A stretch of 64,000 nt of DNA from Marsupella aquatica (taxonomy: Eukaryota > Plantae > Marchantiophyta). Location of the stretch: contig OZ316898.1 of NCBI GenBank assembly GCA_973895155.1, forward strand, positions 2,083,927-2,147,926. Reading direction: 5' to 3'. Positions 15,501 to 64,000 of this stretch are shown here, piece after piece (the first letter of the stretch is position 1; each line of letters begins with the position of its first letter). The notes below the pieces were generated by a model. It was given only the letters and a program-made list of their open reading frames with translations. It did not search any database and was not told the DNA's origin. The translations under genes were made by a program, and so were the position numbers.

Positions 15501-15733
15501 CTCTAAACTGTGATAGTCAGAGTGCTCTTCACTTGGCTGCTAACCAAGTGATGGATAGCAAGGTGAAGCACATTGATATCAAGTACCATTTTATCAGGCA
15601 AGCAGTGTCTGATAAAACTTTTGAGCTAGTCAAGATTGATGGAAAGCTCAATCCCGCTGATGCCTTTACCAAAGTGATTCCTTTGGAGAGTTTCTCAAGA
15701 CACCGTGCTACTTTGCAGGTTTTGCAGTTGTAG
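12514..15733 (+). pseudogene. pol: Copia Pol (protease, integrase, reverse transcriptase, RNase H) with frameshifts and stops
   Basis: WILDSAC (PR); WHFRLGH...CEHC, HSDVWG and RSDNGGE (INT); KARLVAKGF and YVDDM (RT); YVDSDY and KHIDIKYHF (RH). Frame breaks near 13210, 14220 and 14955; TAG at 14629-14631. Confidence 0.93.
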
Positions 15734-15940
15734 TGCAAGTAGAGTTATTTAGCAATGTGTGACTATTTGTATATGGATTACTCATTCCTGTTAGGCTACA
15801 GCTTAGTTCTAGTTAACCCTTAGTTAACCCTTGTGGTTTTTAGGGGGAGACCTGGTTTGGTGATTGTCTAGAACTTCCCGCTGAGAATTCCATATGGTAG
15901 CATTTAGTCCAGTCCCCAAGACAAGAGTCAAGGGGGAGTT

Positions 15941-16284
15941 TGTTAGATATTGCTCTAGTCTTGTAACTCTTGTGCTAACCACAGTTAGGCTAACTCGAGT
16001 TAGGACTTAGCTAAGGTTAGCGGTAGTGCTGTTGTGCATATAGCCAGGGCTAATGCCAGACCCTGGTGGAACTTAGGCTCATTGTTACGGAGCTAGTTGA
16101 GAGATAGGAAGAGCTTGTGCTGTGGATGCTTGGTATGGCCGGTCGGCCTAGAGTGCAGTAAAGCTCTTGTGTGTTCCCGTGGACGTAGCCTCATGTGGAG
16201 GTGAACCACGTATCTCTCTATGTCGACTATTGTGCGTTGGATGGTTCATGGGCTTGCCGTTGCGAATGTCGTCTATGCTCAACA
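15941..16284 (+). repeat. 3' LTR
   Basis: Near-identical to 9564-9907 and preceded by a polypurine tract. Confidence 0.97.
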
Positions 16285-19031
16285 ACAACCAGAACATAAA
16301 CCAAAACACATGTTGAAATCACTTGGTTTGTAGATCATAAATATGAATTTTAAATACATTGCCACTAAACATGTTTGAATTTGAAATACTGCCATGATTT
16401 TTATTGTTTTTACAAAAATACCACGGGTGTCTGTATATAGCTCCCCTGGTGACCTTGGGGAACTTGTCATCCATATACAAACCCTTGGCATTTTTATAAA
16501 TATAAAAAAATCATGGCAATATTGTCAATTAGAACATCTTTAGTGACAAAGAGCTTAAAAGCTCCTCAAAAATATAGTGTATTAGTTTATGTTATGGTGT
16601 ACGCACCGCTTTAACTTGATGTAGATTTAACACAGTGTTATATCATATCAGTACCCACATGTCTCCGTACCCACATGTCCCAACCTTGGAGTGTACGTCA
16701 AATTCCTGGTCAATTTTGACTATTGTGGTAAGTTGCTCATGTATTTATAATTATGGAAATAGTAGGTAAGACATGAGTCATGGGTTATTTCCGCTGCTGT
16801 AAAGGAAACTTGTTTTTCAAGCCTAGGAAAAGGGCAAGCTAGGACTATTGTGTTCAGTTAAGCTGTGAAAGATGTAGATTATGAGGGTCTTTAGAATCAC
16901 ACAGATCACCATGACATAACTTACACCATAGTTGAGTTAAACAAAAGATGTATGCCAGGGATGTATGACCAAAGGAAGGTTTCTATAACTCAAAACATCT
17001 ATCCTAACCGTCATTCATGGCTGAGTGAAACAGATATATAATTATAGCCAAAGCAAATTAAGGCACTACCGGTTTAAAAAAATGAAAAATGAAAATATAA
17101 TAAAATATAATAAAATAAAACAAAAAATACAAAGGCATTCCGGGTAATTTTCACACTCATTTGCATGTCAGATGTGACAATATATTGTGTACTATGTCAC
17201 TCCATACCACAAAAATCCAATTATTTTTGTTCGAAATCACATTTTTCTAGATATGTATATATCTGGCTTTTGATATTTGGTCTGCAATTATGGGAGGCAA
17301 AAGTTAGTATGACCTAAACATGTGTCTCACTATTTGTGGCAGTAAACTTTAGTTAGCTGGAGACTCGAAAGGGATGCTCCCATAGACCAACCCTGTGAAC
17401 TATGGAACCCCCATGGACTGTGACACCTTTACACCTTCACTCATTGACATCCTTATCATACCAAAATGTTTGAAATAACAAAGTTGGACCTTTGATAGAG
17501 ATTTTTGTAAAACTAAGAGGACCATCACTAACAGCCGTTTCACTCCACCCTCAGATATAAGTTACGTATGCCTCAAATTTTGTAGGGTGTGTTTGTCTTG
17601 TGTACAGTGCATGGTATGGAATCTCATCCTCTTGTGTAATCTCGTCCTCTCGTGTACCATTCATAAACATTCTCATTGAGAATTGAGAGACTTACAAATT
17701 TTCAGAAGATGACTTTTGTTTTTTGCCACAATTGACTTATGTGTGTAATCTGTACTATGGAAGCAAAAAAAGAGTTTTGTTGCAGTTGATCAGGGTTGCA
17801 AAAATACATCCAAGCCTTCTTGTAAAAGTGGAGGTCCATATGGGCTCTAATTACTGGAGACTTGAAGTGGCAGTCTGGTCCATCCTTGAAAAGATCCCAC
17901 TAGAAGTGCCCTCATGTCAATTCTTGCAAGGTCCCACCAGAAGTGCCCAACCGGTCAATCCTTGTACATTTATTTTGTTGAACCGTCGCTAGCCATATAA
18001 AAGGGGAAAGTGTCCAAGAGTTCTCATTTTTTAACATTTCACTCATTTCTGTCCTCTACTTTGCCATTTTGCTCCACAATTTCAAGAAAATGATACTATA
18101 AATCAATGGTGAAACCTGGTGAATCCTGTTTTGTAATGGCTAGTGGTGGTTCAAGCTAAGCATCAACTTTTGCGTTGACTGAGAATACTCATCACTTGGC
18201 TTCAATATATTGTGTATGGTATCACTCCATACCATGATAAACCCAATTCTTCTGTTTAAATCACCCAGTGTTCTTCTAAATAAGTACATGGCTGTAGATT
18301 TCAGAAGTGCAATTAGGGGGACACCACCCATTCCTCAAGGGAATAGGTGCATCAATTTTGTGGAATGAAACTCCAGATGCTGATACACATATTAGTGATT
18401 CATTGATAGTCAATAAGTAAGTGGGATCACCTATCATGCAAACCAGATAACCTAACAGTTTCAATCTGCTGTCTTCCTATCGGTACAATTAGAGATAGCC
18501 ACTTCAATACGGCTGTTGACTAAGTACTGTACATATTTTAAGTACTGCAAAGAACAAAAGCTTTACACAAGGATCGGATTAGAAATACAAGGAGTCCAAT
18601 AAAAGGGGGAAGATAAAGAAGAACATAATCCAAGAAAACTGTAGAGCCAAAAAGCCCAATAGTCCCAAACAATGCTTAACAACGACAACAAGGGCTAGAG
18701 CTCCACTTAGAGAGTCTCCAACAGTAGCCTAGGTAAATTGGCCCCACCAAGTGGGGAAGGATGGCAAAGAGCTGCGTTCCCACCGCTGGCCCCCGTTCCT
18801 ATTACGTTAGTGGTCGATATACTTGTTTGGTCTAGTACCCTGGCTTCCACATTTTGGGGCAGTGGCAATATTTAGCGAGACAAGTCCCTGCTGGCTTTCC
18901 AACGTACGCTGCCCACATGCTGCCCCGCTCACTGCCCGCCAAAATCCACAAATACATATTTTTTCTAAGGGTCACACAAACTTAGTATGAACCTCACTTT
19001 TGGGTGGGTTTGTGTAAAAAGCTAAAAGCAT

Positions 19032-19785: not shown

Positions 19786-21919
19786 TTATTCACTTTTGAG
19801 TGTGGATACTTCAAGCACGGCCAGTGGGTAGGGAAAGTCTTTCAGGGCCAGTTGCCTTGAATGCGGCAACCTGTGGACTCTGCCCCCATCCTGACCTCCT
19901 TTTCCCATCCATAATTTCAAAGCAATATTTACTCACGTCACAAGATTCTGGGTATGCCTGGAACCTTAACCAGACATGGCTTACACACCCAGAGCCAAAC
20001 CCAGAGCCAAATCTGTACAGGCACGGCATTCCCTTTATGCAGACTACAGCCTTTGCACCTAGAGTGTTATGGAATATAGCTAGCCATCGGGTGGGTTTGA
20101 CCAAAATATAGCTAGCCAGATCGAAATAAAGCAAATTCAAGACTTTGGTAGTCTCTGTGGGTAGGGAATATGGACAACAGAACAGTGTGGGAACGTGGGG
20201 TACCGCATTATTCTCTGATTGAAAATAGTATTGTCATTTGGAAGACCCTCTGCACCCGTTTCTGAATGCAGTATAATATCTTCAACAAAAGTCGAGGAAA
20301 TTGATGAAACTGCATATCAGAGAATTGGAGAGGAAAAGAAGCACAATCGGATGTGAAGAGCTCGAGCCTAGCCTCAGGTCCTCCACGATCGATACACCAA
20401 GATCAAAGAGTAGTAAGTTCATCAATATGGAACAAAATGCTGGGGTCGAGGGCAGAAGTCTAGGCTATGCTTCTGATTTGCTACGGTACTCGACGTCTAC
20501 AAGCGTTCTACTGCTTGTTGGAGTGTTGACTCTCGTGATTGGCGTGGTGAGCTATGGATCGTGGAGGAAGAAGATTACCAATTTGCCACCGGGGCCCCGC
20601 AATTGGCCAGTCATTGGAGCCCTCTTGGAGATGGAGCCGCTCTTCTACAGGACCTGCGAGAAATTCTCAACGAAGTACGGGCCCGTCGTGTTCTTCCGCT
20701 TGGGAGTTCAATCCATGGTGGTGGTGTCCTCCGGCGAGGCTGCAGAACAGCTTCTGAAACACAAAGACGCGGAGTTTTGCCACAGAACCACCGCAATGAC
20801 CAGATCTGCTGTGAAATACGTAGCGATCGGTGGAAAAGGCCTTCCGTTCTCGAACTACGATGCTGAGTACAAACTGCACAGAAAGCTCCTCGTTACGGAG
20901 AATTTCACCTTGGCAAAGCTCAAGACATCCGAGAAGATCCGGACCCACGAGATGGCAGTCATGGTGGAGACGATAGTCAGCGTAAGCCGGAGCAGTGGCC
21001 ATAGTTCCAAAGTTAGCGAAGAAAATAGTATCACTTCGCCGATTGGCATGCGGTCCACTGTAATGACCATGATCCAGAACATCTTGTTTTCGCTGGCCGT
21101 CGGCAAGAGGTTCGATAGTTTGCCGCCCACGGACAAGCTGAGGGTATTCCCGGAATTGTTGGACAGGCTACTGAAGATCTTCATGGAAGTGAACTTGGTA
21201 AGACAAAGTTCACAGTAGAGCAACAAGCATGGATATCTGAAACATAAGATCATGAATCCTGTTTTTCTTAGTCATATGGTCTGTTTAAGAATTGTCATTC
21301 TGACGGAAACCTCCATAGCTGTTCAATTAAGGTGACAATTCTTTCTAACCCTGAGATGTACTGAACGGCTCCACTGTGCTCCTACGCAGCTAGAAATGAA
21401 ATGAGCTGCTTTTTGTTCTCATCAATTATTGACCTCCAAAGGGTGGCCATTAGGCTAGAGTGTATCAATTACGCGTCTCTTTCCGCTCGAACACCTTGTA
21501 ATCGAGCTAAATTCGATGTGAAGGGTTTTCTATGCCATGGATGATTGCCGAAACACTACCGACGTACAGTGGTCTGCCTGTTTCCGATGAACTACAATGA
21601 ATACAGGACGTAGACTTGTGCATCGTGAGCAGGATTCGCCACGCAATTTGTAATTAACAACTCATATTGCGGCTGTCCGGGTGCAGGTAGATTTGTTCCC
21701 ATGGTTGACGTGGTTTGATCCGCAAGGGTTGGTGAAGATGATGGGAAAGTTTAGCAAAGACCAGAGTCAATTCTACGATAATCTATTCGAGGCGACCAGG
21801 CGAGAAATGAAGCATAAGAGTGAGTCCGGAATTTGGAACGATGCCGACGAACGAAGCTCGGACCGGAGTCTCGTGCATGTTCTTCTCAGGGCTCAAGAAG
21901 AAGGTCAGCTAGACTCATA

Positions 21920-27054: not shown

Positions 27055-29507
27055 ATGGAACAAAATGCTGGGGTCGACGATAGAAGCTAGGCTCTGCTTC
27101 TGATTTGCTATGGAACTCGTCGACAAGCGTTCTACTGCTCGTTGGAGTGGTAACTCTCGTGGTTGCCGCGGTGAGCTATGGATCGCGGAGGAAGAAGATT
27201 ACCAATTTGCCACCCGGACCCCGCAATTGGCCAGTCATTGGAGCCCTCTTGGAGATGGAGCCGCTCTTCCACAGGACCTGCGAGAAGCTCGCAACGAAGT
27301 ACGGGCCCGTCGTGTTCTTCCGCGTTGGAGTTCAATCCATGGTGGTGGTGTCCTCCGGCGAGGCTACAGAAAAGCTTCTGATACACAAAGACGCGGAGTT
27401 TTGCGACAGAAAACCGCCACGACCAGGTCTGCTGCGAAATATACAGTGATCGGTGGAAAAAGCCTTCCCTTCGCGAACTACGATGCAGAGTTCAAACTGC
27501 ACAGAAGGCTCCTCATCACGGAGAACTTCACCTTGACAAAGCTCAAGACATTCGAGAAGATCCGGACTCACGAGATGGCAGTCATGGTGGAGACCATAGT
27601 CAGCGTAAGCCGGAGCAGTGGCCGTAGCTCGAACGATAGTGAGGGTAATAGTACCTCTTCGCCGATTGCCATCCAGTCGACCGTAATGACCATGATCCAG
27701 AACATCTTGTTTTCGCTGGTCTTCGCCAAGAGGTTCGATAGTTTGCCGCCCACAGACAAGCTGAGGGTATTCCCGGAATTGTTGGACACGGTTCTGAAGA
27801 TCTTCATGGAAGTGAACTTGGTAAGACAAAGTCTGCAGTAACCTTAGATATCTAAACACTATAATATCAATCCGCTTTTTCTTTATGTTAAGGGAAGCGT
27901 CCAAGGCTGTTCAATTATGGGGACAAATTTCCTGAATATGTGTGAAATCAGTTAACGGCTCCGCTGTGCACCAAGCAGGGCAGAATGTACCATCGGTTGG
28001 GATGGGAAATGAAATGACATGCTTTTTGTTTTCACCAATTATTGACCTCCAAAAGGACGGGCATTAGGCCAGTGTGGATCAATTACCCGTCTCTTTCCGC
28101 TTGAACACCTTGCAATCCAGCTGAATTCGATCTGAACGGTATTCTTTGCCATGGAAGATGCAGAAAGGCCACCGACGTACATTGTCTGACTGTTCCCAAT
28201 GAACTATTAATAATGTAAACAGGTCTGAGGTAGACTTGTGCATCATGAGCAGGAATCCCCGGGAAATTTGTAATTAACAACTGACATTGCGGCTGTCCGG
28301 GTGCAGGTAGATTTGTTCCCATATATGGTTGGCGTGGTTGGATCCTCAAGGGTTGCTGAAGGCGATGCACAAGTTTAGCAACCAAAAGAGACAATACTAC
28401 GAGACGCTCCTCGAGACGACCAGGCGAGAAATGAAGCATAAGAGTGAGTCCGGAAATTGGAGCGATGCCGACGAAGGAAGCTCGGGCCGGAGTCTCGTAG
28501 ATATTCTTCTCAGTGCTCAAGGAGCAGGTGAGATTCGGGGTGAAATTCTCCCGCAGCTAAACTCATGCCCCATTTACAGCATTGACTATTTGTTTATTCT
28601 TTCGGGTGTCAAGCAAGCTAAGGTAACCATGTGAAGACAACAACCGTGTGTGTGTAAGTGCACCCACGGGAAGAAGGGCTACCATACACAAGATGCACTT
28701 AATAAAACTGATGGACTACTGTGGACTGTTTACTCAATGATCCTGTGCGTAACTATTGATTCACGTACGTAATTCAGGTTCCTTGATCGATAATTCTGCG
28801 AGAGAGGCTTCATGCAATAGTTATTTCGATTATTTGCCACCCTTCTTATTAATAATTACACTCTAACAAATACTCATTTGGGTTACTTAAATTTGTTTTC
28901 CATCTGAATCACTAGGCACCAATATAACCGAGCAGGGTATCATGATGATAATCAATTGCGCTATGGCTGGTGGTACCGACACCGCCAGTTCCCAAGTGGA
29001 GTGGGTGCTACTAGAGGTAGCACGTCACCCGAAGGTGTTGCAAAGACTGCAGGATGATATTGATGGTGTCGTTGGTATAGAACGGCCTTTGGAAGAGGCT
29101 GACCTCCAAGCTATGCCATTCTCAATGCTGTCATCTTGGAATCTATGCGCTTGCATGGGGCTGTGCCTTGCTCGTTTCCTCACGTCAACTTCAGTTGAAG
29201 CCTTCAACCATGTGTGAGTAACCAACCTATAGTAGTGAGACCCGTAGTGAGACTCATTAAGAATTCAGTCGGGGATTCAATTTGAGCATCCTTGCAAGTG
29301 CACGAATTAACAAACTGAACTTTGAATCAATTTGTGTTTAGTTCAATGTTTCATTTCGTAGAATAGAGTTATTCTGAAGCAGAACGAAATCAAATTGCAA
29401 CCGTAATTGATAATCGAGCATTTCAATGGATATTGATACTCGTCATGCATTAGCTTTACAGTCAAAAACTCACTGACATTCTCTCGAGTTGGAATACGAT
29501 CAGGTGG
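27055..29507 (+). pseudogene. Cytochrome P450 (CYP71 clan), copy 2, frameshifted and lacking the heme exon
   Basis: Co-linear with copy 1. Frameshifts near 27087, 27410, 28325 and 29120; GGTDTA I-helix present. The exon-4 acceptor at 29503 is followed after 4 nt by 3' UTR-homologous sequence. Confidence 0.9.
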
Positions 29508-41320: not shown

Positions 41321-42661
<1,341 letters not shown>

Positions 42662-51146: not shown

Positions 51147-54100
51147 ATGTTTTCTTGTTGTTCGGGTGGGGGCTCGACTTCTAAAAGTCCGGACGCATGT
51201 GTATCAAAGAGACTCGAAGTCGATGCCCGAAAGGTATTGATCCCACTGTGCAAACCACAGCACTGCAATAGATCGCTGTCTACTCTGAACTTTTTGTTTC
51301 CAAAATTCTGCTGTGCTCTCCCTTCGCAAACGAAAAGGTAACCCTTTTACACCTAAAATTGACTGATCAGACACTAAAGTTTGAAGGAATTGTGACCACT
51401 TTGGCAATGGATACCTTGGTACTAGCCTGGCAATCATGTTCGATCTAGTTACTTGGCTGCACTTCTGGTTCACTCGGTGTCTCTGATCGATGTTGGCAGG
51501 TGAACGATTCCTTGTACGAGTTGTGGAGGCCATCAGGCACTCCTGAGATGGAGCTTTTATTTTTCCATGGACTCCAATCTGGAGACTCATCAGATGCCCA
51601 TTTACGAACATGGGAAACCGAGGATGGTTCTTCACTTTGGCCCCAGACTTGGTTGGCTCAGGAGTTTCCCACTGCCCGCATATTATGTGTTTCATTTGAT
51701 GGCGCTGTGAGAAAGTGCTCAGGGGGCTTCGACATGCACATCATAGTGGAGAACCTGCTCTCCGATTTCATGCAGGGAAATATTGGACAGACTCCCAATT
51801 GTCCGGTTGTGTTGATTGGCCACTGTTTTGGAGGATTGGTGATTGAAAAACTGTGTTGGGAAGCCAATAACCGGAAGCACGCTGGATTGGAGAGTGCGAG
51901 GGCTAAGGTTGGTGCCTTGCTTGAAAATGTGCAAGGAGTATTTTTCTATGGTACTCCTCACCACGGGACTCCGGGCCTAAGCAAAGCAACAAAATTGGTG
52001 AAGAACAGCCCATTGCTAAGTTTCTACAAAACTTTGAGCAAAGAAGCTAGCAGGCTTGATTTTGAATTTAATCAATTACGTCGAGTTTATGCAACTTGGC
52101 AAGTCTGGGGACTGGGAGAAACTCTCCCAACTGATTGGGTATGAACAATTCTTCACCTCCTGTTGCTTTTTCTAATTTCTATGACTTTGTTCGTCAACTC
52201 CCATAGCTTATCTTGCTAGCTTGTTTTATCCCGTTCGTGTGGTTTTGTAGGGTATATTTCAAGGTGTAGTGGCAGCACCAGAACAGTCTGCTAGAAAAGG
52301 AGATCATTTTAACCTTTTGCCAGTAGACCACCTGTCCATTTGTAAGCCCAAAAATACATCTGACAAGAGGTTTTATTTTCTAACGGAGCTTCTTCGCATC
52401 ATATCAAGAAACTCACAGGTGAGATGGCTCTATCCTACCCTACACCTAAGTCGAGATACATGTTCAAGACAGAACCATCCAATAGGAGTGAATAATATAG
52501 CAGTTATACACAACGATAGGAGCAGATAGAAAAGGCAAGCCTACTAAACTCTAGAGGAATCTCTGAAGCAGACTCAATTCTCTTTGATTGTTTTGAATTC
52601 TAGATACAGATTAAGTGGAAAGTTAGGTTCTATTGAGATTAGTATAAGCGTTACCTGTTTTTCCAATCCCACCTTGTTAGTAGGGCAGGATGATGATTGG
52701 CTGGTATTTGCAACCTATGAGAGCAATCACTAAAATCTGCCTGGGGCCTGGTCATCGCTTTCTGGCATTTGTTGAAGAGAGATTCTAAGTAGTCCCAAAA
52801 TTTGGCTAGGGTCAATTTAGGTTGCTAATGGTAACAAAGTTCTTTTTACACATTACCCCATAGTTCACCACTCATCTAGCTTTAGGAACTTTGTAGAGGT
52901 GACCAAATTATGCGCTTCAACCAGAAATGATTATCGTCAGAGTGACCATTGTAGTTGCTATGTATTGGGAAAATGCATGTACAGATGAGCTGATTCAAAT
53001 TATCTGACCTCGTCAGGTGGCGGTGACTGTTCATGAAGTTTATGGGCTTCCAAAGTATCCTCTTGATTTGAGGAGACGAGCCCTGGATGTGAAGGACAAG
53101 CTCATTCGCGGAGCTACTCTTGGAATTTTTGGCATGGGTGGGATTGGCAAGACCACTCTTGCAAAACAGGCATTTAACATTATGTCCGAAGACTTTGAGT
53201 ACACGTGCTTTGTGGATAATGTGAAAAACATCCCACTACACGAATTGCAGGATCGAGTTCTCAGTCGTTTTCACCACAATGGGAAGAAATCAGATAAGGG
53301 TTCAACCGAGTGGTTTCATATGCAGGACAAGTCAGCTTTAGTTGTCATGGATGACGTAGATGCAGAGGATCAGCTCAAAGTTCTACCACAATTGCAGCAT
53401 TTTGGGACTGGCAGCCGTGTTATCATGACAAGTCGGGATAAAGAAGTTTTCAAATATTATGAGCGTTGCATCATCCATGAGGTTGAGTTTTTGAAACACG
53501 ATGAAGCAAAGAAGCTACTCTGCCAACATGCATTTGGATTGAAGGATGTTCCAGACTTTCTGATTGACAATGTCAATGCAGTGGTTAAAAAATGTGAAGG
53601 GTTGCCCTTGACTTTGGAAGTGATAGGCACATACCTTCGAGACCATGGAGCAAGTGTTCAAGTCTGGAATGAAACTCTACATAGGTTGAGAGAAGCACGA
53701 GCCATAACTGGAGACAAAAGGGACAGAGTGTGGGCTTCCTTGAGGATAAGCTATGATGCCCTGTTACCAGAGGAACAGGAGATGTTCACAGCGGCTGCAT
53801 CGTTTTTCTTTGAACAGCCATTGGACCGGGCCCTTGCAGCATGGAGCAGTCTCACGCAAGCAATGCAGACAACGTGGGGAAACTTGGTGAACAGGTCATT
53901 GGTGAAAGAAATCAACAACAGAGTATGGGTCCACGAGCACCTTCGAGACTTGGCTCAGACTATTTCCAAGGACAGCATTGTTTTGGGGTCTAATGATACC
54001 ACAAACTCAGCAGTGGATCAGTTGAATGACAAGGAGGTAATCGTTCTTCCCAGCATAATTTAGGATTTCCCCCTCTCCTCAGATTTACCTGCTTTGTACA

Positions 54101-57100
54101 CCACTACTTGTAGCTAAGAGATACTGATTTCAGATTCATGTTATCAACTTGCAGGTCACAGCAGGGGGGATAGCAATGAAATATTTGAGGCTTGAGTATT
54201 CTGCCGGTTTCCACACACGAAAGATCCTTCAGTTAGATTCGCTGGCTAAACTAACGGGACTAAAATACATGGATCTAATTGGTGTTTCCTCAGAAGGTTC
54301 GGGAAAGGGTCTCACAAAGAGCATATCTTTGCTAGGTATGTATGGATCACCAGGACCCCAACCGCAGAGAAAGTTCGAGTTCAGCCTCAACAAAATGGAG
54401 AACTTAGCTGTCCTGGAACTATCAAATTGTCGGATCCCACAGGAGTTTCCTGAAGAATTGGGGAACCTGACCAATCTGCGCATTTTGTGTCTTTCTAACC
54501 TAGCGGGGTTGGCCCATCTGCCTGACAATTTTGGGAACCTATCAAGATTGACACGGTTGGAGCTGGAGGGTGTAAGATCACTCACATTGCCAAAATCATT
54601 TGGCAACCTCCTAGCCCTCGAACATCTTGAATTTCGCTTGATACAATTCTTGGCGTTACCTCAAACCTTAGGGAATCTATCCAGCCTGGCAATATTCCGT
54701 ATTATGCAATATGCACGGCTTGAAAGTGCCTCAGTGACAATTACGGATGCTCATGAGCTGCGGACTATACCGGCCTCATTGACAATTTCGGATGCCCATG
54801 AGCTGCAGACTCTGCCGGACAGCTTTTCCTGTCTCAAGTCTCTTAAATATTTGGTATTAGAGTCCTCAAAATTGGAGAGTCTTCCCGATGACATGGGAAA
54901 CCTCTCTTTACTGGAAGAATTGTGGATCGCAGCACCAGGCTTGGAGGGCCTCCCAGATAGCATATGCAAGCTCGGTAATTTGAGGAAATTGACCCTCACG
55001 AAAGCTAAAAACTTGAAGGGCTTGCCGGAGAATTTCGGCCAGCTGCTGGAGCTCCAGCATTTGACAATTTGGGATGCCCATGAGCTGCAGACTCTGCCGG
55101 ACAGCTTTTACTGTCTCAAGTCTCTTAAATATTTGTCATTAGAGTTGGAGAGTCTTCCCGATGACATGGGAAACCTCTCTTTACTGGAAGAATTGCGGAT
55201 CCCAGCACCGGAGGGCATCCCACATAGCATATGCAAGCTCGGTAATTTGAGGACATTGACCCTCATGAAAGCTAAAAACTTGAAGGGCTTGCTGGAGAAT
55301 TTCGGCCAGCTGATGGAGCTGCAGCATTTGGAAATTTGGGGTGCTGATGAGCTGCAGACTCTGCCGGACAGCTTTTCCTGTCTCAAGTCTCTTAAAACGC
55401 TGACATTCGAGTCCTCAAAATTGGAGAGTCTTCCCGATGACATGGGAAACCTCTCTTTACTGGAAGAATTGTGGATCGCAGCACCAAGCTTGGAGGGCCT
55501 CCCAGATAGCATATGCAAGCTCGGTAATTTGAGGACATTGACCCTCAAGAAAGCTAAAAACTTGAAGGGCTTGCCGGAGAATGTCGGCCAGCTGATGGAG
55601 CTGCAGCATTTGGAAATTTCGGGTGCTGATGAGCTGCAGACTCTGCCGGACAGCTTTTCCTGTCTCAAGTCTCTTAAAAACCTGACATTCGAGTCCTCAA
55701 AATTGGAGAGTCTTCCCGATGACATGGGAAACCTCTCTTTACTGGAAGAATTGTGGATCGCAGCACCAGGCTTGGAGGGCCTCCCAGATAGCATATGCAA
55801 GCTCGGTAATTTGAGGAAATTGACCCTCACGAAAGCTAAAAACTTGAAGGGCTTGCCGGAGAATTTCGGCCAGCTGCTGGAGCTCCAGCATTTGACAATT
55901 TGGGATGCCCATGAGCTGCAGACTCTGCCGGACAGCTTTTACTGTCTCAAGTCTCTTAAATATTTGTCATTAGAGTTGGAGAGTCTTCCCGATGACATGG
56001 GAAACCTCTCTTTACTGGAAGAATTGCGGATCCCAGCACCGGAGGGCATCCCACATAGCATATGCAAGCTCGGTAATTTGAGGACATTGACCCTCATGAA
56101 AGCTAAAAACTTGAAGGGCTTGCTGGAGAATTTCGGCCAGCTGATGGAGCTGCAGCATTTGGAAATTTGGGGTGCTGATGAGCTGCAGACTCTGCCGGAC
56201 AGCTTTTCCTGTCTCAAGTCTCTTAAAACGCTGACATTCGAGTCCTCAAAATTGGAGAGTCTTCCCGATGACATGGGAAACCTCTCTTTACTGGAAGAAT
56301 TGTGGATCGCAGCACCAAGCTTGGAGGGCCTCCCAGATAGCATATGCAAGCTCGGTAATTTGAGGACATTGACCCTCAAGAAAGCTAAAAACTTGAAGGG
56401 CTTGCCGGAGAATGTCGGCCAGCTGATGGAGCTGCAGCATTTGGAAATTTCGGGTGCTGATGAGCTGCAGACTCTGCCGGACAGCTTTTCCTGTCTCAAG
56501 TCTCTTAAAAAGCTGACATTCGAGTCCTCAAAATTGGAGAGGCTGCCCGACGACATGGGAAACCTCTCTTCACTGGAAAACTTGCGCATCACAGCACCAA
56601 GCTTGGAGGGCCTCCCAGATAGCATATGCAAGCTCGGTAATTTGAGGACATTGACCCTCAAGAAAGCTAAAAACTTGAAGGGCTTGCCGGAGAATTTCGG
56701 CCAGCTGATGGAGCTGCAGCATTTGGAAATTTGGGGTGCTGATGAGCTGCAGACTCTGCCGGACAGCTTTTCCTGTCTCAACTCTCTTAAAAAGCTGACA
56801 TTCGAGTCCTCAAAATTGGAGAGTCTTCCCGATGACATGGGAAACCTCTCTTTACTGGAAGAATTGTGGATCGCAGCACCAAGCTTGGAGGGCCTCCCAG
56901 ATAGCATATGCAAGCTCGGTAATTTGAGGACATTGAACCTCATGAAAGCTAAAAACTTGAAGGGCTTGCCGGAGAATTTCGGCCAGCTGCTAAAGCTCCA
57001 GGATTTGAGAATTTGGGATGCCCATGAGCTGCAGACTCTCCCGGACAGCTTTTCCTGTCTCAAGTCTCTTAAATATTTGGTATTAGAGTCCTCAAAATTG

Positions 57101-60100
57101 GAGAGTCTTCCCGGTGACATGGGATACCTCTCTTCACTGGAAAAATTGCGCATCACAGCACCAAGCTTGGAGGGCCTCCCAGATAGCATATGCAAGCTCG
57201 GTAATTTGAGGGAATTGACCCTCAAGAAAGCTTAAAACTTGAAGGGCTTGCCGGAGAATGTCGGCCAGCTGATGGAGCTGCAGCATTTGGAAATTTCGGG
57301 TGCTGATGAGCTGCAGACTCTGCCGGACAGCTTTTCCTGTCTCAAGTCTCTTAAAAACCTGACATTCGAGTCCTCAAAATTGGAGAGTCTTCCCGATGAC
57401 ATGGGAAACCTCTCTTTACTGGAAGAATTGTGGATCGCAGCACCAGGCTTGGAGGGCCTCCCAGATAGCATATGCAAGCTCGGTAATTTGAGGAAATTGA
57501 CCCTCACGAAAGCTAAAAACTTGAAGGGCTTGCCGGAGAATTTCGGCCAGCTGCTAAAGCTCCAGGATTTGAGAATTTGGGATGCCCATGAGCTGCAGAC
57601 TCTCCCGGACAGCTTTTCCTGTCTCAAGTCTCTTAAATATTTGGTATTAGAGTCCTCAAAATTGGAGAGTCTTCCCGGTGACATGGGATACCTCTCTTCA
57701 CTGGAAAAATTGCGCATCACAGCACCAAGCTTGGAGGGCCTCCCAGATAGCATATGCAAGCTCGGTAATTTGAGGGAATTGACCCTCAAGAAAGCTTAAA
57801 ACTTGAAGGGCTTGCCGGAGAATGTCGGCCAGCTGATGGAGCTGCAGCATTTGGAAATTTCGGGTGCTGATGAGCTGCAGACTCTGCCGGACAGCTTTTC
57901 CTGTCTCAAGTCTCTTAAAAACCTGACATTCGAGTCCTCAAAATTGGAGAGTCTTCCCGATGACATGGGAAACCTCTCTTTACTGGAAGAATTGTGGATC
58001 GCAGCACCAGGCTTGGAGGGCCTCCCAGATAGCATATGCAAGCTCGGTAATTTGAGGAAATTGACCCTCACGAAAGCTAAAAACTTGAAGGGCTTGCCGG
58101 AGAATTTCGGCCAGCTGCTGGAGCTCCAGCATTTGACAATTTGGGATGCCCATGAGCTGCAGACTCTGCCGGACAGCTTTTACTGTCTCAAGTCTCTTAA
58201 ATATTTGTCATTAGAGTTGGAGAGTCTTCCCGATGACATGGGAAACCTCTCTTTACTGGAAGAATTGCGGATCCCAGCACCGGAGGGCATCCCACATAGC
58301 ATATGCAAGCTCGGTAATTTGAGGACATTGACCCTCATGAAAGCTAAAAACTTGAAGGGCTTGCTGGAGAATTTCGGCCAGCTGATGGAGCTGCAGCATT
58401 TGGAAATTTGGGGTGCTGATGAGCTGCAGACTCTGCCGGACAGCTTTTCCTGTCTCAAGTCTCTTAAAACGCTGACATTCGAGTCCTCAAAATTGGAGAG
58501 TCTTCCCGACGACATGGGAAACCTCTCTTCACTGGAAAAATTGCGCATCACAGCACCAAGCTTGGAGGGCCTCCCAGATAGCATATGCAAGCTCGGTAAT
58601 TTGAGGACATTGACCCTCAAGAAAGCTAAAAACTTGAAGGGCTTGCCGGAGAATTTCGGCCAGCTGATGGAGCTGCAGCATTTGGAAATTTGGGGTGCTG
58701 ATGAGCTGCAGACTCTGCCGGACAGCTTTTCCTGTCTCAACTCTCTTAAAAAGCTGACATTCGAGTCCTCAAAATTGGAGAGTCTTCCCGATGACATGGG
58801 AAACCTCTCTTTACTGGAAGAATTGTGGATCGCAGCACCAAGCTTGGAGGGCCTCCCAGATAGCATATGCAAGCTCGGTAATTTGAGGAAATTGACCCTC
58901 AAGAAAGCTAAAAACTTGAAGGGCTTGCCGGAGAATGTCGGCCAGCTGATGGAGCTGCAGCATTTGGAAATTTCGGGTGCTGATGAGCTGCAGACTCTGC
59001 CGGACAGCTTTTCCTGTCTCAAGTCTCTTAAAAAGCTGACATTCGAGTCCTCAAAATTGGAGAGTCTTCCCGATGACATGGGAAACCTCTCTTTACTGGA
59101 AGAATTGTGGATCGCAGCACCAAGCTTGGAGGGCCTCCCAGATAGCATATGCAAGCTCGGTAATTTGAGGACATTGAACCTCATGAAAGCTAAAAACTTG
59201 AAGGGCTTGCCGGAGAATTTCGGCCAGCTGCTAAAGCTCCAGGATTTGAGAATTTGGGATGCCCATGAGCTGCAGACTCTCCCGGACAGCTTTTCCTGTC
59301 TCAAGTCTCTTAAATATTTGGTATTAGAGTCCTCAAAATTGGAGAGTCTTCCCGGTGACATGGGATACCTCTCTTTACTGGAAGAATTGTGGATCGCAGC
59401 ACCAAGCTTGGAGGGCCTCCCAGATAGCATATGCAAGCTCGGTAATTTGAGGAAATTGACCCTCATGAAAGCTAAAGACTTGAAGGGCTTGCCGGAGAAT
59501 TTCGGCCAGCTGATGGAGCTCCAGCATTTGGATATTTTGGGTGCTGATGAGCTGCAGACTCTGCCGGACAGCTTTTCCTGTCTCAAGTCTCTTAAAAAGC
59601 TGACATTCGAGTCCTCAAAATTGGAGAGGCTGCCCGACGACATGGGAAACCTCTCTTCACTGGAAAAATTGCGCATCACAGCACCAAGCTTGGAGGGCCT
59701 CCCAGATAGCATACGCAAGCTCCTTAATTTGAGGACATTGTGTCTCAGCAACGCTAAGAAGTTGAACAGCTTGCCCGAGGATTTCGGCCAGCTGATCGAG
59801 CTGCAGCATTTGGAAGTTGGTGAGGCTGATGAGCTGCAGACTCTACCGGACAGCTTTTCCTTTCTCAAGTCTCTGAAAAAGTTGATATTAGAATCCTCAA
59901 AATTGGAGAGGCTTCCCGATGACATGGGAAACCTCTCTTTACTGGAAGAACTGTTGATCGCAGCACCAAGCTTGGAGGGCCTCCCAGATAGCATACGCAA
60001 GCTCGGTAATTTGAGGGAATTAACTCTGAGCAACGCTAAAAACTTAAAGGGCTTGCCGGAGGATTTCGGCCAGCTAATGGAGCTGCTGCATTTGGCAATT

Positions 60101-62280
60101 GGTGATGCTGATGAGCTGCAGACTCTACCGGACAGCTTTTCCTGTCTCAAGTCTCTTAAAAAGTTTACATTAGAATCCTCAAAATTGGGGAGGCTTCCCG
60201 ATGACATGGGAAACCTCTCGTTACTGGAAGAATTGTGGATCGCAGCACCAAGCTTGGAGGGCCTCCCAGATAGCATACGCAAGCTCGGTAATCTGAGGGA
60301 ATTGACCCTGAAGAACGCTAAAAACTTGAAGGGCTTGCCGGAGAGTTTGGGCCAGCTGATGGACCTGCAGCATTTGGAAATTTGGGGTGCTCATGAGCTG
60401 AAGACTCTACCGGACAGCTTTTCCTGTCTCAAGTCTCTTAAAAAGTTGGCATTAGAATCCTCAAAATTGCAGAGTCTTCCCGATGACATGGGAAACCTCT
60501 CTTTACTGGAAGAATTGTGGATCGCAGCACCATGCTTGGAGGGCCTCCCAGATAGCATACGCAAGCTCGGTAATTTGAGGGAATTGACTCTGAATAACGC
60601 TAAAAACTTAAAGGGCTTGCCGGAGGATTTCGGCCAGCTAATGGAGCTGCTGCATTTGGCAATTGGTGATGCTGATGAGCTGCAGACTCTGCCGGACAGC
60701 TTTTCCTGTCTCAAGTCTCTTAAGAAGTTTACATTAGAATCCTCAAAATTGGGGAGGCTTCCCGATGACATGGGAAACCTCTCGTTACTGGAAGAATTGT
60801 GGATCGCAGCACCAAGCTTGGAGGGCCTCCCAGATAGCATTCGCAAGCTCGGCAATTTGAGGGAATTGACCCTCAAGAAAGCTAAAAACTTGAAGGGCTT
60901 GCCGGAGAGTTTCGGCCAGCTGATGGAGCTACAGCATTTGGAAATTTCGGGTGCTGATGAGCTGCAGACTCTGCCGGACAGCTTTTCCTGTCTCAAGTCT
61001 CTTAAAAAGTTTACATTAGAATGCTCAAAATTGGAGAGACTGCCCGACGACATGGGAAACCTCTCTTTACTGGAAGAATTGTGGATCGCGGCACCAAGCT
61101 TGGAAGGCCTCCCAGATAGCATAGGCAAGCTCTGTAATTTGAGGACATTGACTCACAAATTTTAGAGACTTGAAGGGCTTGCCGGAGGATTTCGTCCAGC
61201 TGATCGAGCTGCAGGACTTGGGGATTTCGGGTTTTGATGAGCTGCACACTCTTACCGGACATCTTTTCCTGTCTCAAATCGCTTCAAAAGTCGACATTAC
61301 AATGCTGATAATTGGCAAGGCTTCCCAAGAACATGGGAAAACTCTCTTTACGGGAAAAATTGTGGATCGGCACCAAGCTTGGAGGGCCTCGCATATAGCG
61401 TACTTCAGCTCCGTAATTTGAGGACATTGACTCTCACCAATGCTGAAAACTTGAAGAGTTTGCCGGAGGATTTTGGCCAGCTGAGCGATCTGCAGGATTT
61501 GACAATTTGGGATGCCGATGAGCTGCAGACTTTACCGGAGAGCTTCTCCCGTCTCATGTCTCTTAAAAAGTTGACATTAAAGTGCTCAAAATTTGAGAGG
61601 CTGCCCGACAATTTCGGAAAACTCTTTTGCATAGAAGAATTAAATATCCGGTCAAGAAGCTTGGAAAGTCTGCCGGAGAGCATACGGCAGCTTCAGTCGC
61701 TGGAAAATATGAACCTTGCGGCGGGAAAAAGCGAGAGGAATCTACTAGATAGCATCGGACAAATTTCATCGTTACGTAAGTTGGAATTCGATTGCGATGG
61801 GCATGAGGAGACACCCGACCTTTTTGAACCCTTTTAATGCTTTGAACATGAGCTAATTCTCACAGGGCGAGGTACACGGATCCTGCCGCAGGTTTGGGTA
61901 GCCTTTCCTCATTAAAAGCCCTGGGTCTGAAACAGTTACCGCTTTTGGAGACGTTACCGGATGATGTTGGAACTCTCTCTTCTCTAGAACGCTTCACCGT
62001 GATGGATTGTAATATGTTGGAGAGCCTTCCGGACAGTTTGGGGCAAGTCTCTTCTCTGAAAGACGTCATGTTTGTCAGTTGCCAGAGACTGAAGACTCTG
62101 CCTGAAAGCTGGGGAAAGTCCGCGATTCAACGAGAATTGCTGCAAGGAGACCTTTCTGTTGAGCATAGGTTGCAAACAGAGGAGTCCTCCCAGACCAAGA
62201 AAACGGAGGTGATGCCACTAATCATTATAGGGTGTCCCTTGATGAGTCGAAGCGGGGAAGTTTCGGTCACCCAATTCTAA
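51147..62280 (+). CDS. Alpha/beta-hydrolase-NB-ARC-LRR immune receptor (HNL-type NLR) with giant LRR array; open frame ends at a premature TAA at 57233-57235
   Basis: Phase-0 exons 51147-51233, 51500-52138, 52251-52418, 53017-54036 and 54155 onward. Hydrolase motifs LLFFHGL, WPQTWL, GHCFGG, FFYGTPHHG and DHLSICKP. NB-ARC motifs: P-loop GMGGIGKTT, LVVMDDV, GSRVIMTSRD, GLPL and VHE. LRRs continue to about 62110. The protein is about 1660 aa up to the first stop. Confidence 0.92.
54779..61700 (+). repeat. Intragenic tandem array of about 25 x 282-bp units (94 aa = 4 LRRs of 23/23/24/24 aa)
   Basis: 'LQTLPDSF' recurs every 282 bp (267 bp in a deletion variant), with higher-order 831-bp and 564-bp duplications. 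Confidence 0.97.
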
Positions 62281-64000
62281 TCACCTACTAGACACCAATA
62301 GAAAGAATCCTTCGAAAGCTTTCAGGTTGCACGGGGAGCTGACTGATGGGATTTTAGCTTGGCCTGAAGGTGTACTCAACGATGTCAAAAGTTACTTTTT
62401 GATATTGAGATGTCTGGACAAGCAAGCCGCATTAGAGGCCAGGGGTTACCCATCGATCAAAGTTGCTTAGGATCATGTTGGATTTATGGTTGACAGCGAT
62501 CGTGGCTGGCCATTTTATGAAGAAACTCAAGGTAGAAAGATGTGGACAGTTTCTTTATCGATTCTAAATGTAATATTTGCCGTGACGAATGGGGCAAAGA
62601 CCTGTTGGGTTGTCCACGTTCTCTGCTGTCACCACTCACCAGTATCTTTTCTAGGTAGGCTGGTAACGAGCTCTTCTTTGGTTGACTACTGGATATCTTA
62701 TGCAAATGATTTCATTGATCCATACAAGATCGGGGATGCAAAGCCTGGGGATGGGCCACGGAAGACGTTGAGATCCATGTTCACGTACAGGAGAGAAGGT
62801 GAGATGAACAGTCTTCACAGGAATATGAAGCTCTTGTCATGGTCGTAAATGATCTTCCATTGCAGTCCTTCATTCCGTTCAAGTATGCAGGCAGCAGCAT
62901 CATGCAACAAGAGTGAGTTGCCGTGCAAGTGCACAGAGAATTGCGTTTGCCGCAAGTGAAACACGATTAGGTGGGTCACGTGGCAAAAACTTATGGCAGG
63001 CAGGTGGGTCAAGTTCGCAATTTATTATGGCTTTCACAGGAGCCATAGTATCACCAGTTGCCCCGACAGTAGAGCTTTACCATGTCTTGCAAGGCATAGA
63101 AAGAGAGTCTGTGCTGGCGTAATTTCCCAGTGCTCATTTTGTAGACAACAGTTAAAATCTGATGCCAAATAATTCAATTCAGAACTTCCTACTAAACTCC
63201 TGCCTTCAGTCGTGACAATACTCGACGGAGAGACGATTCAAGGTTTGGATGTACATACTCGAGCCCCTAATAAAGTGGCACTCAAGTACAGTCTCCATAG
63301 CAAATTACTGTATGTACAGTGGGATAATCGAATTGGACTGGGGCAACGAAGTCTACAGTGGTGCGCCAAATCGCTGTCAATTCATCCACGACTTCAACAA
63401 GTTCCGTGGCCCGCAAAAAATAGTTTTGGGGTTGCCAGTGTGACAATTTTCAGTTCTGGACTTCGGCGGTGAGGTTTCTTCTTACTTCCGTAGCCTTCTC
63501 CAGTTTTCGTCCGTGGTGGGTCATACGTAATCGAGGGCCAATCTCGCCAAACAGCAAACTGAATCCGGATTTTCGGGATGAAATTCTCCACAGCCAGCCG
63601 ATGGAGGTTTCCGAATGAAATCCGTCATTGGAAATGTGGATATTATCCTTGGTGGGTTAAGAGAATGCATCGGGCACATCCACCTCGAATGCTAGGAATG
63701 AAGATGTTGTCCACGACAAGTGAGCCTGGGTTTCCGTGATCTCGAGTCATTCCCACTCCTTGCTTTCCAACCAGTCCAAGCCGAAAATGTTTCCCCTGTC
63801 CAAGCTCGGAGGTACGCACGCATGTGGGGACACCAGGCTCTGAAAGGGTATCAGCAGCCGCATTTCTTCGCCAATTCTCCATGCTTCGCCGACTAAAGAT
63901 CAGAGAAAAGGCATGGCTGACACTGCTCTTCGATCATTTTGCGGCGCATACAGTTCTCTTGTTCTCCACCGATCGAGTGGACCAGCCCCGCTCATCGTCA

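What the first reader, a model, noticed from the sequence alone, without database searches (positions are those of the whole stretch)
51147..62280. Giant hydrolase-NLR with about 100 LRRs built from a 282-bp four-LRR cassette
Seen: an alpha/beta-hydrolase and NB-ARC followed by about 25 near-identical 94-aa units (A LQTLPDSF.., B LESLPDDMG.., C LEGLPDSI.., D LKGLPENFG..) plus flanking divergent LRRs. The full reading frame would exceed 3000 aa. Established: hydrolase-NBS-LRR genes are a bryophyte (liverwort) NLR class, and plant NLR LRRs normally number a few tens and are mutually divergent. Inference: this receptor evolves like fungal NLRs with high-internal-conservation repeats (e.g. Podospora HET-E WD40 arrays), acting as a recombination-driven recognition repertoire in an early-diverging land plant.
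Basis: partly seen in the sequence, partly recalled or inferred. Interest (0 to 1): 0.9.

Follow-up and report, generated by a model that had tools for sequence, protein, structure and literature searches.

The report
Broken liverwort immune receptor, 24-cassette LRR array
A liverwort immune-receptor gene (hydrolase, NB-ARC and LRR domains) has copied a four-LRR block about 24 times in tandem and reshuffled the copies much as fungal receptors do, but stop codons and frameshifts break it, so no 3000-residue protein is made here.

Summary
TRF finds a 282-bp tandem array at 54784-61608 (24.4 copies, 89% matches). It lies in exon 5 of a five-exon gene that encodes an alpha/beta-hydrolase fold, an NB-ARC domain and LRRs. 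Its closest relatives are Calypogeia fissa hydrolase-NLRs. K-mer depth in the best-holding run fits the assembled copy number, so an assembly artefact is unlikely.

The claimed reading frame of over 3000 aa is not open. There are two identical TAA codons (57233, 57797). A 2-bp deletion after 61151 leads to TAG at 61163. Cassette 25 is decayed. There is a further TAA at 61835 and a frameshift at 61888. The longest intact product is 1664 aa with about 41 LRRs.

The cassettes are 85% identical in protein on average, not uniformly near-identical. Amino-acid changes concentrate on the xxLxLxx face (pN/pS 1.52 against 0.45 elsewhere). The sub-repeats are reassorted between cassettes (Rmin 11).

Three C. 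fissa relatives carry their own LRR arrays (72 bp x16, 144 bp x13, 486 bp x4), so cassette amplification looks like a trait of this gene family.

Verdict: a truncated, decaying allele at the extreme of a repeat-amplifying NLR family. It is a new variant of a known kind. Other first-stage notes of this scan cover this same stretch.

The parts
51147..51233 (+). Exon 1: ATG plus 29 codons (MFSCCSGGGS...), followed by a GT donor.
   Evidence: Matches the N-terminus of C. fissa P0001. Junction read.
51500..52138 (+). Exon 2: core of the alpha/beta-hydrolase domain (213 codons). The nucleophile elbow reads GHCFGG, with Cys where the family consensus has Ser.
   Evidence: 68% identical to P0001. AF2 model with pLDDT 86 matches alpha/beta-hydrolases in the PDB. 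Pfam Abhydrolase_6 is only sub-threshold. Elbow residue among 26 relatives: Ser 17, Cys 6, Gly 3.
52251..52418 (+). Exon 3: C-terminal part of the hydrolase domain (56 codons, includes VDHLSICKP).
   Evidence: 63% identical to P0001 residues 240-296. AG/GT junctions read.
53017..54036 (+). Exon 4: NB-ARC domain (340 codons) with the P-loop GMGGIGKT and the DDV, TSR, GLPL and HEHL motifs present.
   Evidence: Pfam NB-ARC E 8.1e-36. 61% identical to P0001. Motifs located.
54155..57235 (+). Open part of exon 5: about 6 unique LRRs, then cassettes 2-9 and 0.7 of cassette 10, ending at the first TAA. With exons 1-4 this gives a 1664-aa product.
   Evidence: ORF 54149-57235. Acceptor site at 54155. 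LRR_14 E 5.6e-33. The AF2 model shows a regular strand/helix solenoid pattern.
54800..61240 (+). 23 tandem four-LRR cassettes (u02-u24). Twenty are 282 bp. Three are 267 bp (u03, u06, u14) and carry the same two in-frame deletions.
57233..57235 (+). In-frame TAA in cassette 10. Its AAAAAC-for-TAAAAC version is found 13 times in the window and the K-N residues stand in 17 of the other 19 full cassettes.
57797..57799 (+). Second in-frame TAA, in cassette 12. It is a copy of the first.
   Evidence: Cassettes 10 and 12 are 100% identical. The sequence context is identical.
56944..58119 (+). Two-cassette (564-bp) duplication that carries the TAA. 612 bp are exactly identical between the two copies.
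61150..61165 (+). 2-bp deletion after 61151 in cassette 24, which shifts the frame into TAG at 61163-61165.
   Evidence: A 986-bp contig of run X1 covers 61060-62045 with no differences.
61241..61519 (+). Cassette 25: decayed, about 80% identical to the others, with stops and indels in every frame.
61520..61801 (+). Cassette 26: an old, divergent cassette (about 60% identical to the others) that leads into the C-terminal region.
61835..61837 (+). In-frame TAA in the non-repeat C-terminal region.
   Evidence: Alignment to the C-terminus encoded by C. fissa locus L001. The variant allele in runs X3 and X5 reads CGT here.
61888..62280 (+). C-terminal LRRs and tail, now in a different frame after a frameshift at about 61888. 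The ORF runs 61894-62280.
   Evidence: 52% identical to the L001 C-terminus but in another frame. Runs X3 and X5 carry an extra G behind 61887.

Best explanation
This is a hydrolase-type NLR immune-receptor gene (alpha/beta-hydrolase, NB-ARC, LRR) of a leafy liverwort. Calypogeia fissa is its nearest relative in the databases.

Its LRR exon grew by repeated, in-register unequal recombination of a 282-bp block that encodes four LRRs. The result is 23 full cassettes plus two older ones. Blocks of 2, 3 and about 8 cassettes were copied very recently.

While the cassettes were coding, amino-acid change was favoured at the exposed xxLxLxx positions and disfavoured elsewhere. Sub-repeat variants were reassorted between cassettes. 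This is the same evolutionary mode as fungal high-internal-conservation (HIC) NLR repeats and tomato Cf-2/Cf-5.

The allele in this genome is damaged. Its C-terminal region and last cassettes have decayed. A TAA in cassette 10, later copied into cassette 12, limits the product to 1664 aa (hydrolase, NB-ARC, about 41 LRRs, no C-terminal cap).

Shown here: the anatomy, the lesions, the copy-number consistency, the pattern of substitutions, and the arrays in relatives. Inferred: the immune function, the order of events, and whether the truncated product still works.
For: - Array and cassettes.
- Gene model: five phase-0 exons with GT-AG borders, colinear with C. fissa P0001.
- Domains: NB-ARC E 8e-36; hydrolase fold.
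- Lesions.
- Copy number: in run X1, k-mer depth per assembled copy is 17.5-18.8 inside the array. That equals the single-copy array pieces (18.6-18.8) and is close to the flanks (12-16).
- Recent copying: exact repeats of 821, 712, 612 and 578 bp at offsets of 3, 8, 2 and 11 cassettes.
- Selection: pN/pS is 1.52 at the 20 xxLxLxx codons and 0.45 at the other 74. There are 31 amino-acid changes in the 20 codons against 29 in the 74 (permutation P<1e-5).
- Reassortment: 264 of 861 site pairs fail the four-gamete test, and Rmin is 11.
- Relatives carry their own LRR arrays: 486 bp x4.2 at 96% (L001), 144 bp x13.3 at 89% (L002), 72 bp x16.4 at 88% (L003), and Riccia 213 bp x2.4 (L004).
- Runs of another organism label (X3, X5) hold a variant allele about 4% different. 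It lacks the TAA at 61835 and restores the frame at 61887.
Against: - No read evidence covers the two TAA codons at 57233 and 57797. The public contigs break inside the repeat.
- There is no RNA evidence at all.
- The 3.4 kb between the second TAA and cassette 24 carries no frameshift. That fits only a very recent truncation or ongoing homogenisation.
- The pN/pS contrast comes from non-independent cassette pairs. It records past selection, not present function.
- K-mer depth could include paralogous copies elsewhere in the genome.
Confidence: 0.75

Rival explanations
1. Dead gene with runaway repeats. The locus lost function first, and most of the array growth is neutral, satellite-like amplification of non-coding DNA with no role in recognition.
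For: - There are six lesions in exon 5.
- The stop codon itself was duplicated.
- About nine of the 23 cassettes belong to error-free recent block duplications.
- The C. fissa relative P0001 also carries an in-frame stop inside its array.
Against: - Replacement changes concentrate at binding-face codons while the scaffold is under constraint.
- The older distal cassettes u19-u23 are open and diverse.
- The intact relative P0151 has a 13-copy array with the same pattern of variable positions.
- Exons 1-4 show no lesion.
Confidence: 0.2
2. Intact giant receptor of over 3000 aa. On this view the stops and frameshifts are sequencing errors, are spliced out, or are read through.
For: - Apart from the two TAA codons, the frame is open from 54155 to 61162, which is 2336 codons.
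- A variant allele in runs X3 and X5 looks intact at 61150, 61835 and 61887.
Against: - A zero-difference 986-bp contig of X1 confirms the 2-bp deletion, the decayed cassette 25, the TAA at 61835 and the frameshift.
- The two TAA codons lie in 612 bp of exactly duplicated sequence.
- The one GT...AG pair I examined around 61140-61380 runs into a stop.
- Nuclear stop-codon editing is not known in liverworts (my own knowledge).
Confidence: 0.04
3. Assembly artefact. The array is inflated or mis-joined because of its repeats, which include exact matches of up to 821 bp.
For: - Exact repeats of 578-821 bp exist.
- No public contig spans the array.
Against: - K-mer depth per assembled copy inside the array (17.5-18.8) equals that of single-copy pieces.
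- Runs of a second organism label also show array k-mers at many times single-copy depth (318 against 23-52).
- Relatives in an independent assembly carry comparable arrays.
Confidence: 0.06
4. Expressed front plus silent store. The 1664-aa product is a working receptor, and the untranslated cassettes downstream act as donors for gene conversion into the expressed part.
For: - Exons 1-4 and the first 8.7 cassettes are intact.
- Exact blocks are shared between cassettes upstream and downstream of the stop.
- Sub-repeat variants are reassorted.
Against: - There is no evidence of expression.
- No directionality of exchange can be inferred.
- The same pattern follows from simple recent duplication.
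- No precedent exists in plants.
Confidence: 0.06

Closest known systems
Bryophyte hydrolase-NLRs (Hyd-NLR / HNL class), e.g. Marchantia polymorpha and Calypogeia fissa proteins (Chia et al. 2024, PMC11218826)
   Same: - The domain order is N-terminal alpha/beta-hydrolase, NB-ARC, then C-terminal LRRs.
- The exon structure is colinear with C. fissa P0001 and 61-68% identical to it in the hydrolase and NB-ARC parts.
- Marchantia hydrolase domains trigger HR-like cell death in Nicotiana benthamiana (PMC11218826).
   Different: - The LRR exon holds 23-25 tandem four-LRR cassettes (6.8 kb), against 1.2-2 kb arrays in the relatives examined.
- The nucleophile is Cys, not Ser.
- The reading frame is broken.
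Fungal NLRs with high-internal-conservation (HIC) repeats (Podospora HET-E/HET-D/NWD family; Dyrka et al. 2014, PMC4986451)
   Same: - A STAND/NLR architecture with tandem C-terminal repeats about 85% identical to each other.
- Repeats are reshuffled in register.
- Replacement changes are focused on the interaction surface.
   Different: - The repeats are LRRs, which fungal NLRs lack.
- The conserved unit is a four-LRR cassette, not a single motif.
- Exchange between paralogues and length polymorphism between individuals have not been shown.
- This allele is truncated.
Tomato Cf-2/Cf-5 receptor-like proteins (Matsushima and Miyashita 2012, PMC4030839)
   Same: - A plant immune receptor with tandem repeats of a highly conserved multi-LRR super-motif.
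- LRR number varies between alleles and paralogues (20-33; Cf-2 and Cf-5 differ by six LRRs).
   Different: - Cf-2/Cf-5 are extracellular receptor-like proteins, not NLRs.
- Their unit is two LRRs repeated about ten times, not four LRRs repeated 23 times.
Calypogeia fissa paralogues P0151 (locus L002), P0071 (L003) and P0001 (L001)
   Same: - They belong to the same NLR clade.
- Each has a tandem LRR array at 88-96% identity.
- In P0151 the variable positions lie at the same places within the LRR.
- P0001 also has an in-frame stop inside its array.
   Different: - Their cassette sizes are 144, 72 and 486 bp (2, 1 and about 7 LRRs).
- Their copy numbers are 13, 16 and 4.
- P0151 is open through its array. 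I did not check the frame of P0071's array.

Membership tests
Plant NLR (NB-ARC + LRR) | NB-ARC nucleotide-binding domain with P-loop, kinase-2, GLPL and MHD-like motifs | tested here: met
   Pfam PF00931 E 8.1e-36. GMGGIGKT, DDV, TSR, GLPL and HEHL are all present.
Plant NLR (NB-ARC + LRR) | C-terminal leucine-rich repeats | tested here: met
   LRR_14 E 5.6e-33. The AF2 model shows a regular strand/helix solenoid pattern.
Plant NLR (NB-ARC + LRR) | Uninterrupted coding sequence through the LRR domain to the family's C-terminus | tested here: not met
   There are three TAA codons, one TAG after a 2-bp deletion, a decayed cassette and a frameshift.
Bryophyte hydrolase-NLR (Hyd-NLR/HNL) | N-terminal alpha/beta-hydrolase fold ahead of the NB-ARC domain | tested here: met
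   The exon-2 model has pLDDT 86 and pTM 0.85. Its top PDB matches are monoacylglycerol lipases, thioesterases and lipases, with E down to 1.3e-06. By sequence alone the match is only sub-threshold.
Bryophyte hydrolase-NLR (Hyd-NLR/HNL) | Closest relatives are bryophyte NLRs with the same architecture | tested here: met
   The top hits are C. fissa proteins with NB-ARC starting at about residue 300. The exons are colinear with P0001.
Bryophyte hydrolase-NLR (Hyd-NLR/HNL) | Serine nucleophile in the GxSxG elbow (catalytic competence) | tested here: not met
   The elbow reads GHCFGG. Among 26 relatives the residue is Ser in 17, Cys in 6 and Gly in 3. Whether the Cys form is active is unknown.
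High-internal-conservation (HIC) NLR repeats (Dyrka et al. 2014) | Repeats more than 85% identical over at least 100 aa | tested here: met
   Mean protein identity between cassettes is 85.3%. 52% of pairs reach 85% or more, and several are 100% identical, over about 2100 aa. This holds at the level of cassettes. The four LRRs within a cassette differ from one another.
High-internal-conservation (HIC) NLR repeats (Dyrka et al. 2014) | Diversifying selection on interaction-surface positions | tested here: met
   pN/pS is 1.52 at the xxLxLxx codons against 0.45 elsewhere. The enrichment of replacement changes has P<1e-5. This is a pairwise method and the pairs are not independent.
High-internal-conservation (HIC) NLR repeats (Dyrka et al. 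2014) | Repeat shuffling (concerted evolution) within the gene | tested here: met
   Rmin is 11. Sub-repeat variants are reassorted between cassettes. Exact blocks are shared at several different offsets.
High-internal-conservation (HIC) NLR repeats (Dyrka et al. 2014) | Repeat-number polymorphism between individuals and exchange between paralogues | not testable with these tools
   The public runs are held only as k-mer contigs that break inside the array. The paralogues examined have different cassettes.
High-internal-conservation (HIC) NLR repeats (Dyrka et al. 2014) | Repeat type is WD40, ANK or TPR | tested here: not met
   The repeats here are LRRs. No fungal NLR with LRRs was found in PMC4986451.

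The most novel reading that the evidence does not exclude
Leafy-liverwort hydrolase-NLRs as a family may diversify recognition by amplifying and reshuffling near-identical LRR cassettes. This would be a plant, LRR-based counterpart of fungal HIC repeats that arose independently. Each gene would have its own cassette size (1, 2, 4 or 7 LRRs). The present locus would be the largest such array known. Intact alleles of over 3000 aa and about 100 LRRs may still segregate in relatives, given the intact-looking variant allele in runs X3 and X5.
Probability: 0.3. Interest if true: 0.75.

Novelty: new variant of a known kind. Interest (0 to 1): 0.55.

Why it matters
Plant NLRs are thought to gain new specificities mainly through gene duplication, point substitution and exchange between paralogues. 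An array of 23 reshuffled four-LRR cassettes points to a different route in an early-diverging land-plant lineage. Four loci of the same clade (this one and three C. fissa relatives) carry tandem arrays of 4 to 24 copies with different cassette sizes. That route is intragenic cassette amplification and recombination, so far documented for fungal NLRs and, on a small scale, for tomato Cf-2/Cf-5.

The idea is directly testable with long reads across accessions. The locus also shows that such arrays are fragile. Two of the four leafy-liverwort arrays examined carry in-frame stops. This matters for NLR annotation, because gene models get cut or split at these points.

Tried and rejected
- **Reads on the array.** I laid public runs on 56400-62399. 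All runs are k-mer contigs that break inside the repeat. No piece covers 56800-57999, so the two TAA codons could not be checked. Array length could only be tested through depth.
- **Expression.** Run X6 is only guessed to be RNA. It gave 45-57-nt matches to conserved LRR motifs that then run on into unlike sequence. I do not count that as evidence of expression.
- **Hydrolase by sequence.** Pfam Abhydrolase_6 has E 0.0065, below its cut-off. The PDB sequence search gave E of 0.35 or worse. The fold comparison settled the question instead.
- **Species identity.** A P450 exon from the window found only paralogues 53% identical, from C. fissa. The runs' organism names are coded.
- **Synteny.** The flanks of the gene in L001 share no nucleotide similarity with the window. 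P0001 is therefore a paralogue or a distant orthologue.
- **Intron hypothesis.** I considered that an intron might remove 61140-61380. I examined one GT...AG pair by eye, and it runs into a stop. This was not a systematic search.
- **LRR model.** The AF2 model of the 1026-aa open LRR part was made from a single sequence. Its confidence is only moderate (pLDDT 65.6). It shows the solenoid pattern, but I could not measure its geometry.
- As required, the joined five-exon protein was not built or searched. Exons were searched separately by reference.


Full report
**Observation.** Tandem Repeats Finder reports one array at 54784-61608 with period 282, 24.4 copies and 89% matches. I anchored on the motif ELQTLPDSF in the frame of the long ORFs. 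This gives 23 cassettes from 54800 to 61240. Twenty are 282 bp. Three (u03, u06, u14) are 267 bp and share the same two in-frame deletions. A decayed cassette follows at 61241-61519 and a divergent one at 61520-61801. The cassette occurs nowhere else in the window, and the window holds a single NB-ARC.

**Gene model.** I used the closest protein, Calypogeia fissa P0001, as a guide. The gene has five exons, all in phase 0 with GT-AG borders: 51147-51233, 51500-52138, 52251-52418, 53017-54036, and exon 5 starting at 54155.
- Exon 4 is an NB-ARC domain (Pfam E 8.1e-36) with its motifs present.
- Exons 2-3 give only sub-threshold hydrolase matches by sequence.
- I modelled exon 2 with an alignment of 25 relatives. 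The model has pLDDT 86 and matches 341 PDB chains at E<=0.001. The top matches are all alpha/beta-hydrolases.
- The nucleophile elbow reads GHCFGG. Among 26 relatives that position is Ser in 17, Cys in 6 and Gly in 3.
- As required, I did not build or search the joined spliced protein. Exons were searched one by one.

**The frame is not open.**
- Exon 5 runs from 54155 to a TAA at 57233-57235, in cassette 10. The same TAA recurs at 57797-57799 in cassette 12.
- Cassettes 10 and 12 are identical. They lie in a 564-bp duplication with 612 bp of exact identity.
- A 2-bp deletion after 61151 leads to TAG at 61163-61165.
- Cassette 25 has stops and indels in every frame.
- I aligned the natural C-terminus encoded by C. 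fissa locus L001 to the window. This shows a further TAA at 61835-61837 and a frameshift at 61888. After the frameshift the homologous C-terminal LRRs and tail continue in another frame to 62280.
- The longest intact product is therefore 29+213+56+340+1026 = 1664 aa, with about 41 LRRs.
- The figure of over 3000 aa describes a hypothetical ancestor, or another allele, not this sequence.

**Is the array an assembly artefact?** All public runs that hold the locus are available only as k-mer contigs. None spans the array, and none covers the two TAA codons. Depth gives an indirect test.
- In run X1 the array pieces have depths of 158, 117, 160 and 30. In the assembly their 31-mers occur on average 8.4, 6.7, 8.7 and 1.7 times. 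That is 17.5-18.8 per assembled copy.
- This equals the single-copy pieces inside the array (18.6-18.8) and is close to the flanks (12-16).
- A 986-bp X1 contig covers 61060-62045 with no differences. It confirms the 2-bp deletion, cassette 25, the TAA at 61835 and the frameshift.
- X1 may be the sample that was assembled. This is therefore a check against collapse or inflation of the array, not an independent replicate.

**A second allele.** Runs X3 and X5 carry another coded organism label. They hold contigs about 4% different from the window over 61575-62315.
- These contigs read CGT instead of TAA at 61835-61837.
- They have an extra G behind 61887. That joins the upstream frame to the 61894-62280 ORF.
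- At 61150 they continue with a sequence that reads as an intact LRR.
- X3 also holds contigs identical to the window at about half that depth.
- So an allele or homeologue with an intact-looking C-terminal region exists.

**How the cassettes vary.**
- Nucleotide identity averages 94% among u02-u18 and 90% among u19-u23. Protein identity averages 85% (range 73-100%).
- Exact repeats of 821, 712, 612 and 578 bp link cassettes at offsets of about 3, 8, 2 and 11 units. Roughly nine cassettes therefore come from very recent block duplications.
- Among 16 distinct full cassettes, the 20 xxLxLxx codons carry at least 31 amino-acid changes. The other 74 codons carry 29 (permutation P<1e-5).
- Pairwise pN/pS is 1.52 at the xxLxLxx codons and 0.45 elsewhere.
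- The four LRR sub-repeats occur as 8-11 protein variants each. These variants are reassorted between cassettes. 264 of 861 site pairs fail the four-gamete test, and Rmin is 11.
- These are the footprints of coding sequence under diversifying selection with in-register recombination, not of a neutral satellite. They record history, not present function.

**Relatives.**
- A search of 1.84 billion representative proteins with the NB-ARC exon found C. fissa proteins at the top. The best is P0001 at 61% identity, with NB-ARC starting at about residue 300.
- C. fissa and Riccia NLRs also stand high in the search with the LRR part, among LRR proteins of many other organisms.
- At the DNA level, P0001 has a 486-bp array (x4.2, 96%). 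That array carries its own in-frame stop, and the annotation splits the gene there.
- P0151 has an open 144-bp array (x13.3, 89%). Its variable positions lie at the same places within the LRR.
- P0071 has a 72-bp array (x16.4, 88%).
- Riccia sorocarpa P0216 has only 213-bp x2.4 and 144-bp x2.2 arrays.
- Of the 262 proteins fetched, 39 show at least 2.5 copies of an internal cassette at 80% identity or more. These include angiosperm and gymnosperm NLRs, and none exceeds about 4 copies at that threshold.
- Cassette duplication in LRR domains is therefore common in plants. High copy numbers mark this liverwort clade, and the present array is the largest I saw.

**Literature.**
- Hydrolase-NLRs are a recognised class enriched in non-flowering plants. 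Two Marchantia hydrolase domains elicit HR-like cell death in Nicotiana benthamiana (PMC11218826).
- Fungal HIC repeats are defined as over 85% identity across at least 100 aa. They show shuffling and positive selection on surface positions. Fungal NLRs have no LRRs (PMC4986451).
- Tomato Cf-2/Cf-5 carry tandem repeats of a two-LRR super-motif in variable number (PMC4030839).
- My full-text searches found no paper that describes high-copy LRR cassette arrays in bryophyte NLRs. These searches are limited and do not prove absence.

**Verdict.** The structure is real and unusual in scale. The analogy with fungal HIC repeats holds at the level of sequence signatures. The headline claim of an intact giant receptor with about 100 LRRs does not hold for this genome. 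The allele is truncated at 1664 aa and its 3' part is decaying. Whether the array's size was ever functional is open, as is whether open alleles exist. Four first-stage notes of this scan (s1-763471, s1-763484, s1-763494, s1-763539) cover this same stretch of this genome. My tests agree with them.

Noticed in passing
window 51818-51835: The nucleophile elbow of the hydrolase domain reads GHCFGG, with Cys in place of the family's usual Ser. Among 26 aligned relatives the position is Ser in 17, Cys in 6 and Gly in 3. Loss or replacement of the serine is therefore recurrent in this NLR clade.
   Followed up: partly
L001:16103-16105, with gene models 10001-16105 and 16547-17263: C. fissa P0001 ends at an in-frame stop inside its own 486-bp LRR array. 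The frame then continues to a natural C-terminus that the annotation calls as a separate gene. This is a second case of a premature stop within a liverwort LRR array.
   Followed up: partly
window 61575-62399 in runs X3 and X5: Run X3 holds two versions of the 3' region. One is identical to the window (depth about 23). The other is about 4% different (depth about 42-52) and looks intact in the C-terminal region. This suggests a polyploid, a heterozygote or a mixed sample.
   Followed up: no
window 54728-54818: A 45-bp direct duplication (2 copies, 86%) sits at the 5' edge of the array. It repeats the boundary motif (ITDAHELRTIP / ISDAHELQTLP). It may be a trace of the first unequal exchange.
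   Followed up: no
window 11557-14249 (+) and 5538-6446 (-): There are fragments of a copia-type LTR retrotransposon (gag, Pol_BBD, pre-integrase, SH3-like, integrase). There is also a DDE_Tnp_4 (Harbinger-type) transposase ORF.
   Followed up: no
window 20301-21218, 27110-27841 and 41324-42025: Two cytochrome P450 exon-like ORFs and a WDR5-type WD40 propeller ORF lie upstream of the NLR. The P450 has only 53%-identical relatives in C. fissa.
   Followed up: partly
window 55108-60282 (-): Long antisense ORFs (up to 700 aa at 58180-60282) run through the array. They are the expected by-product of a stop-free repeat and show no sign of being genes.
   Followed up: no
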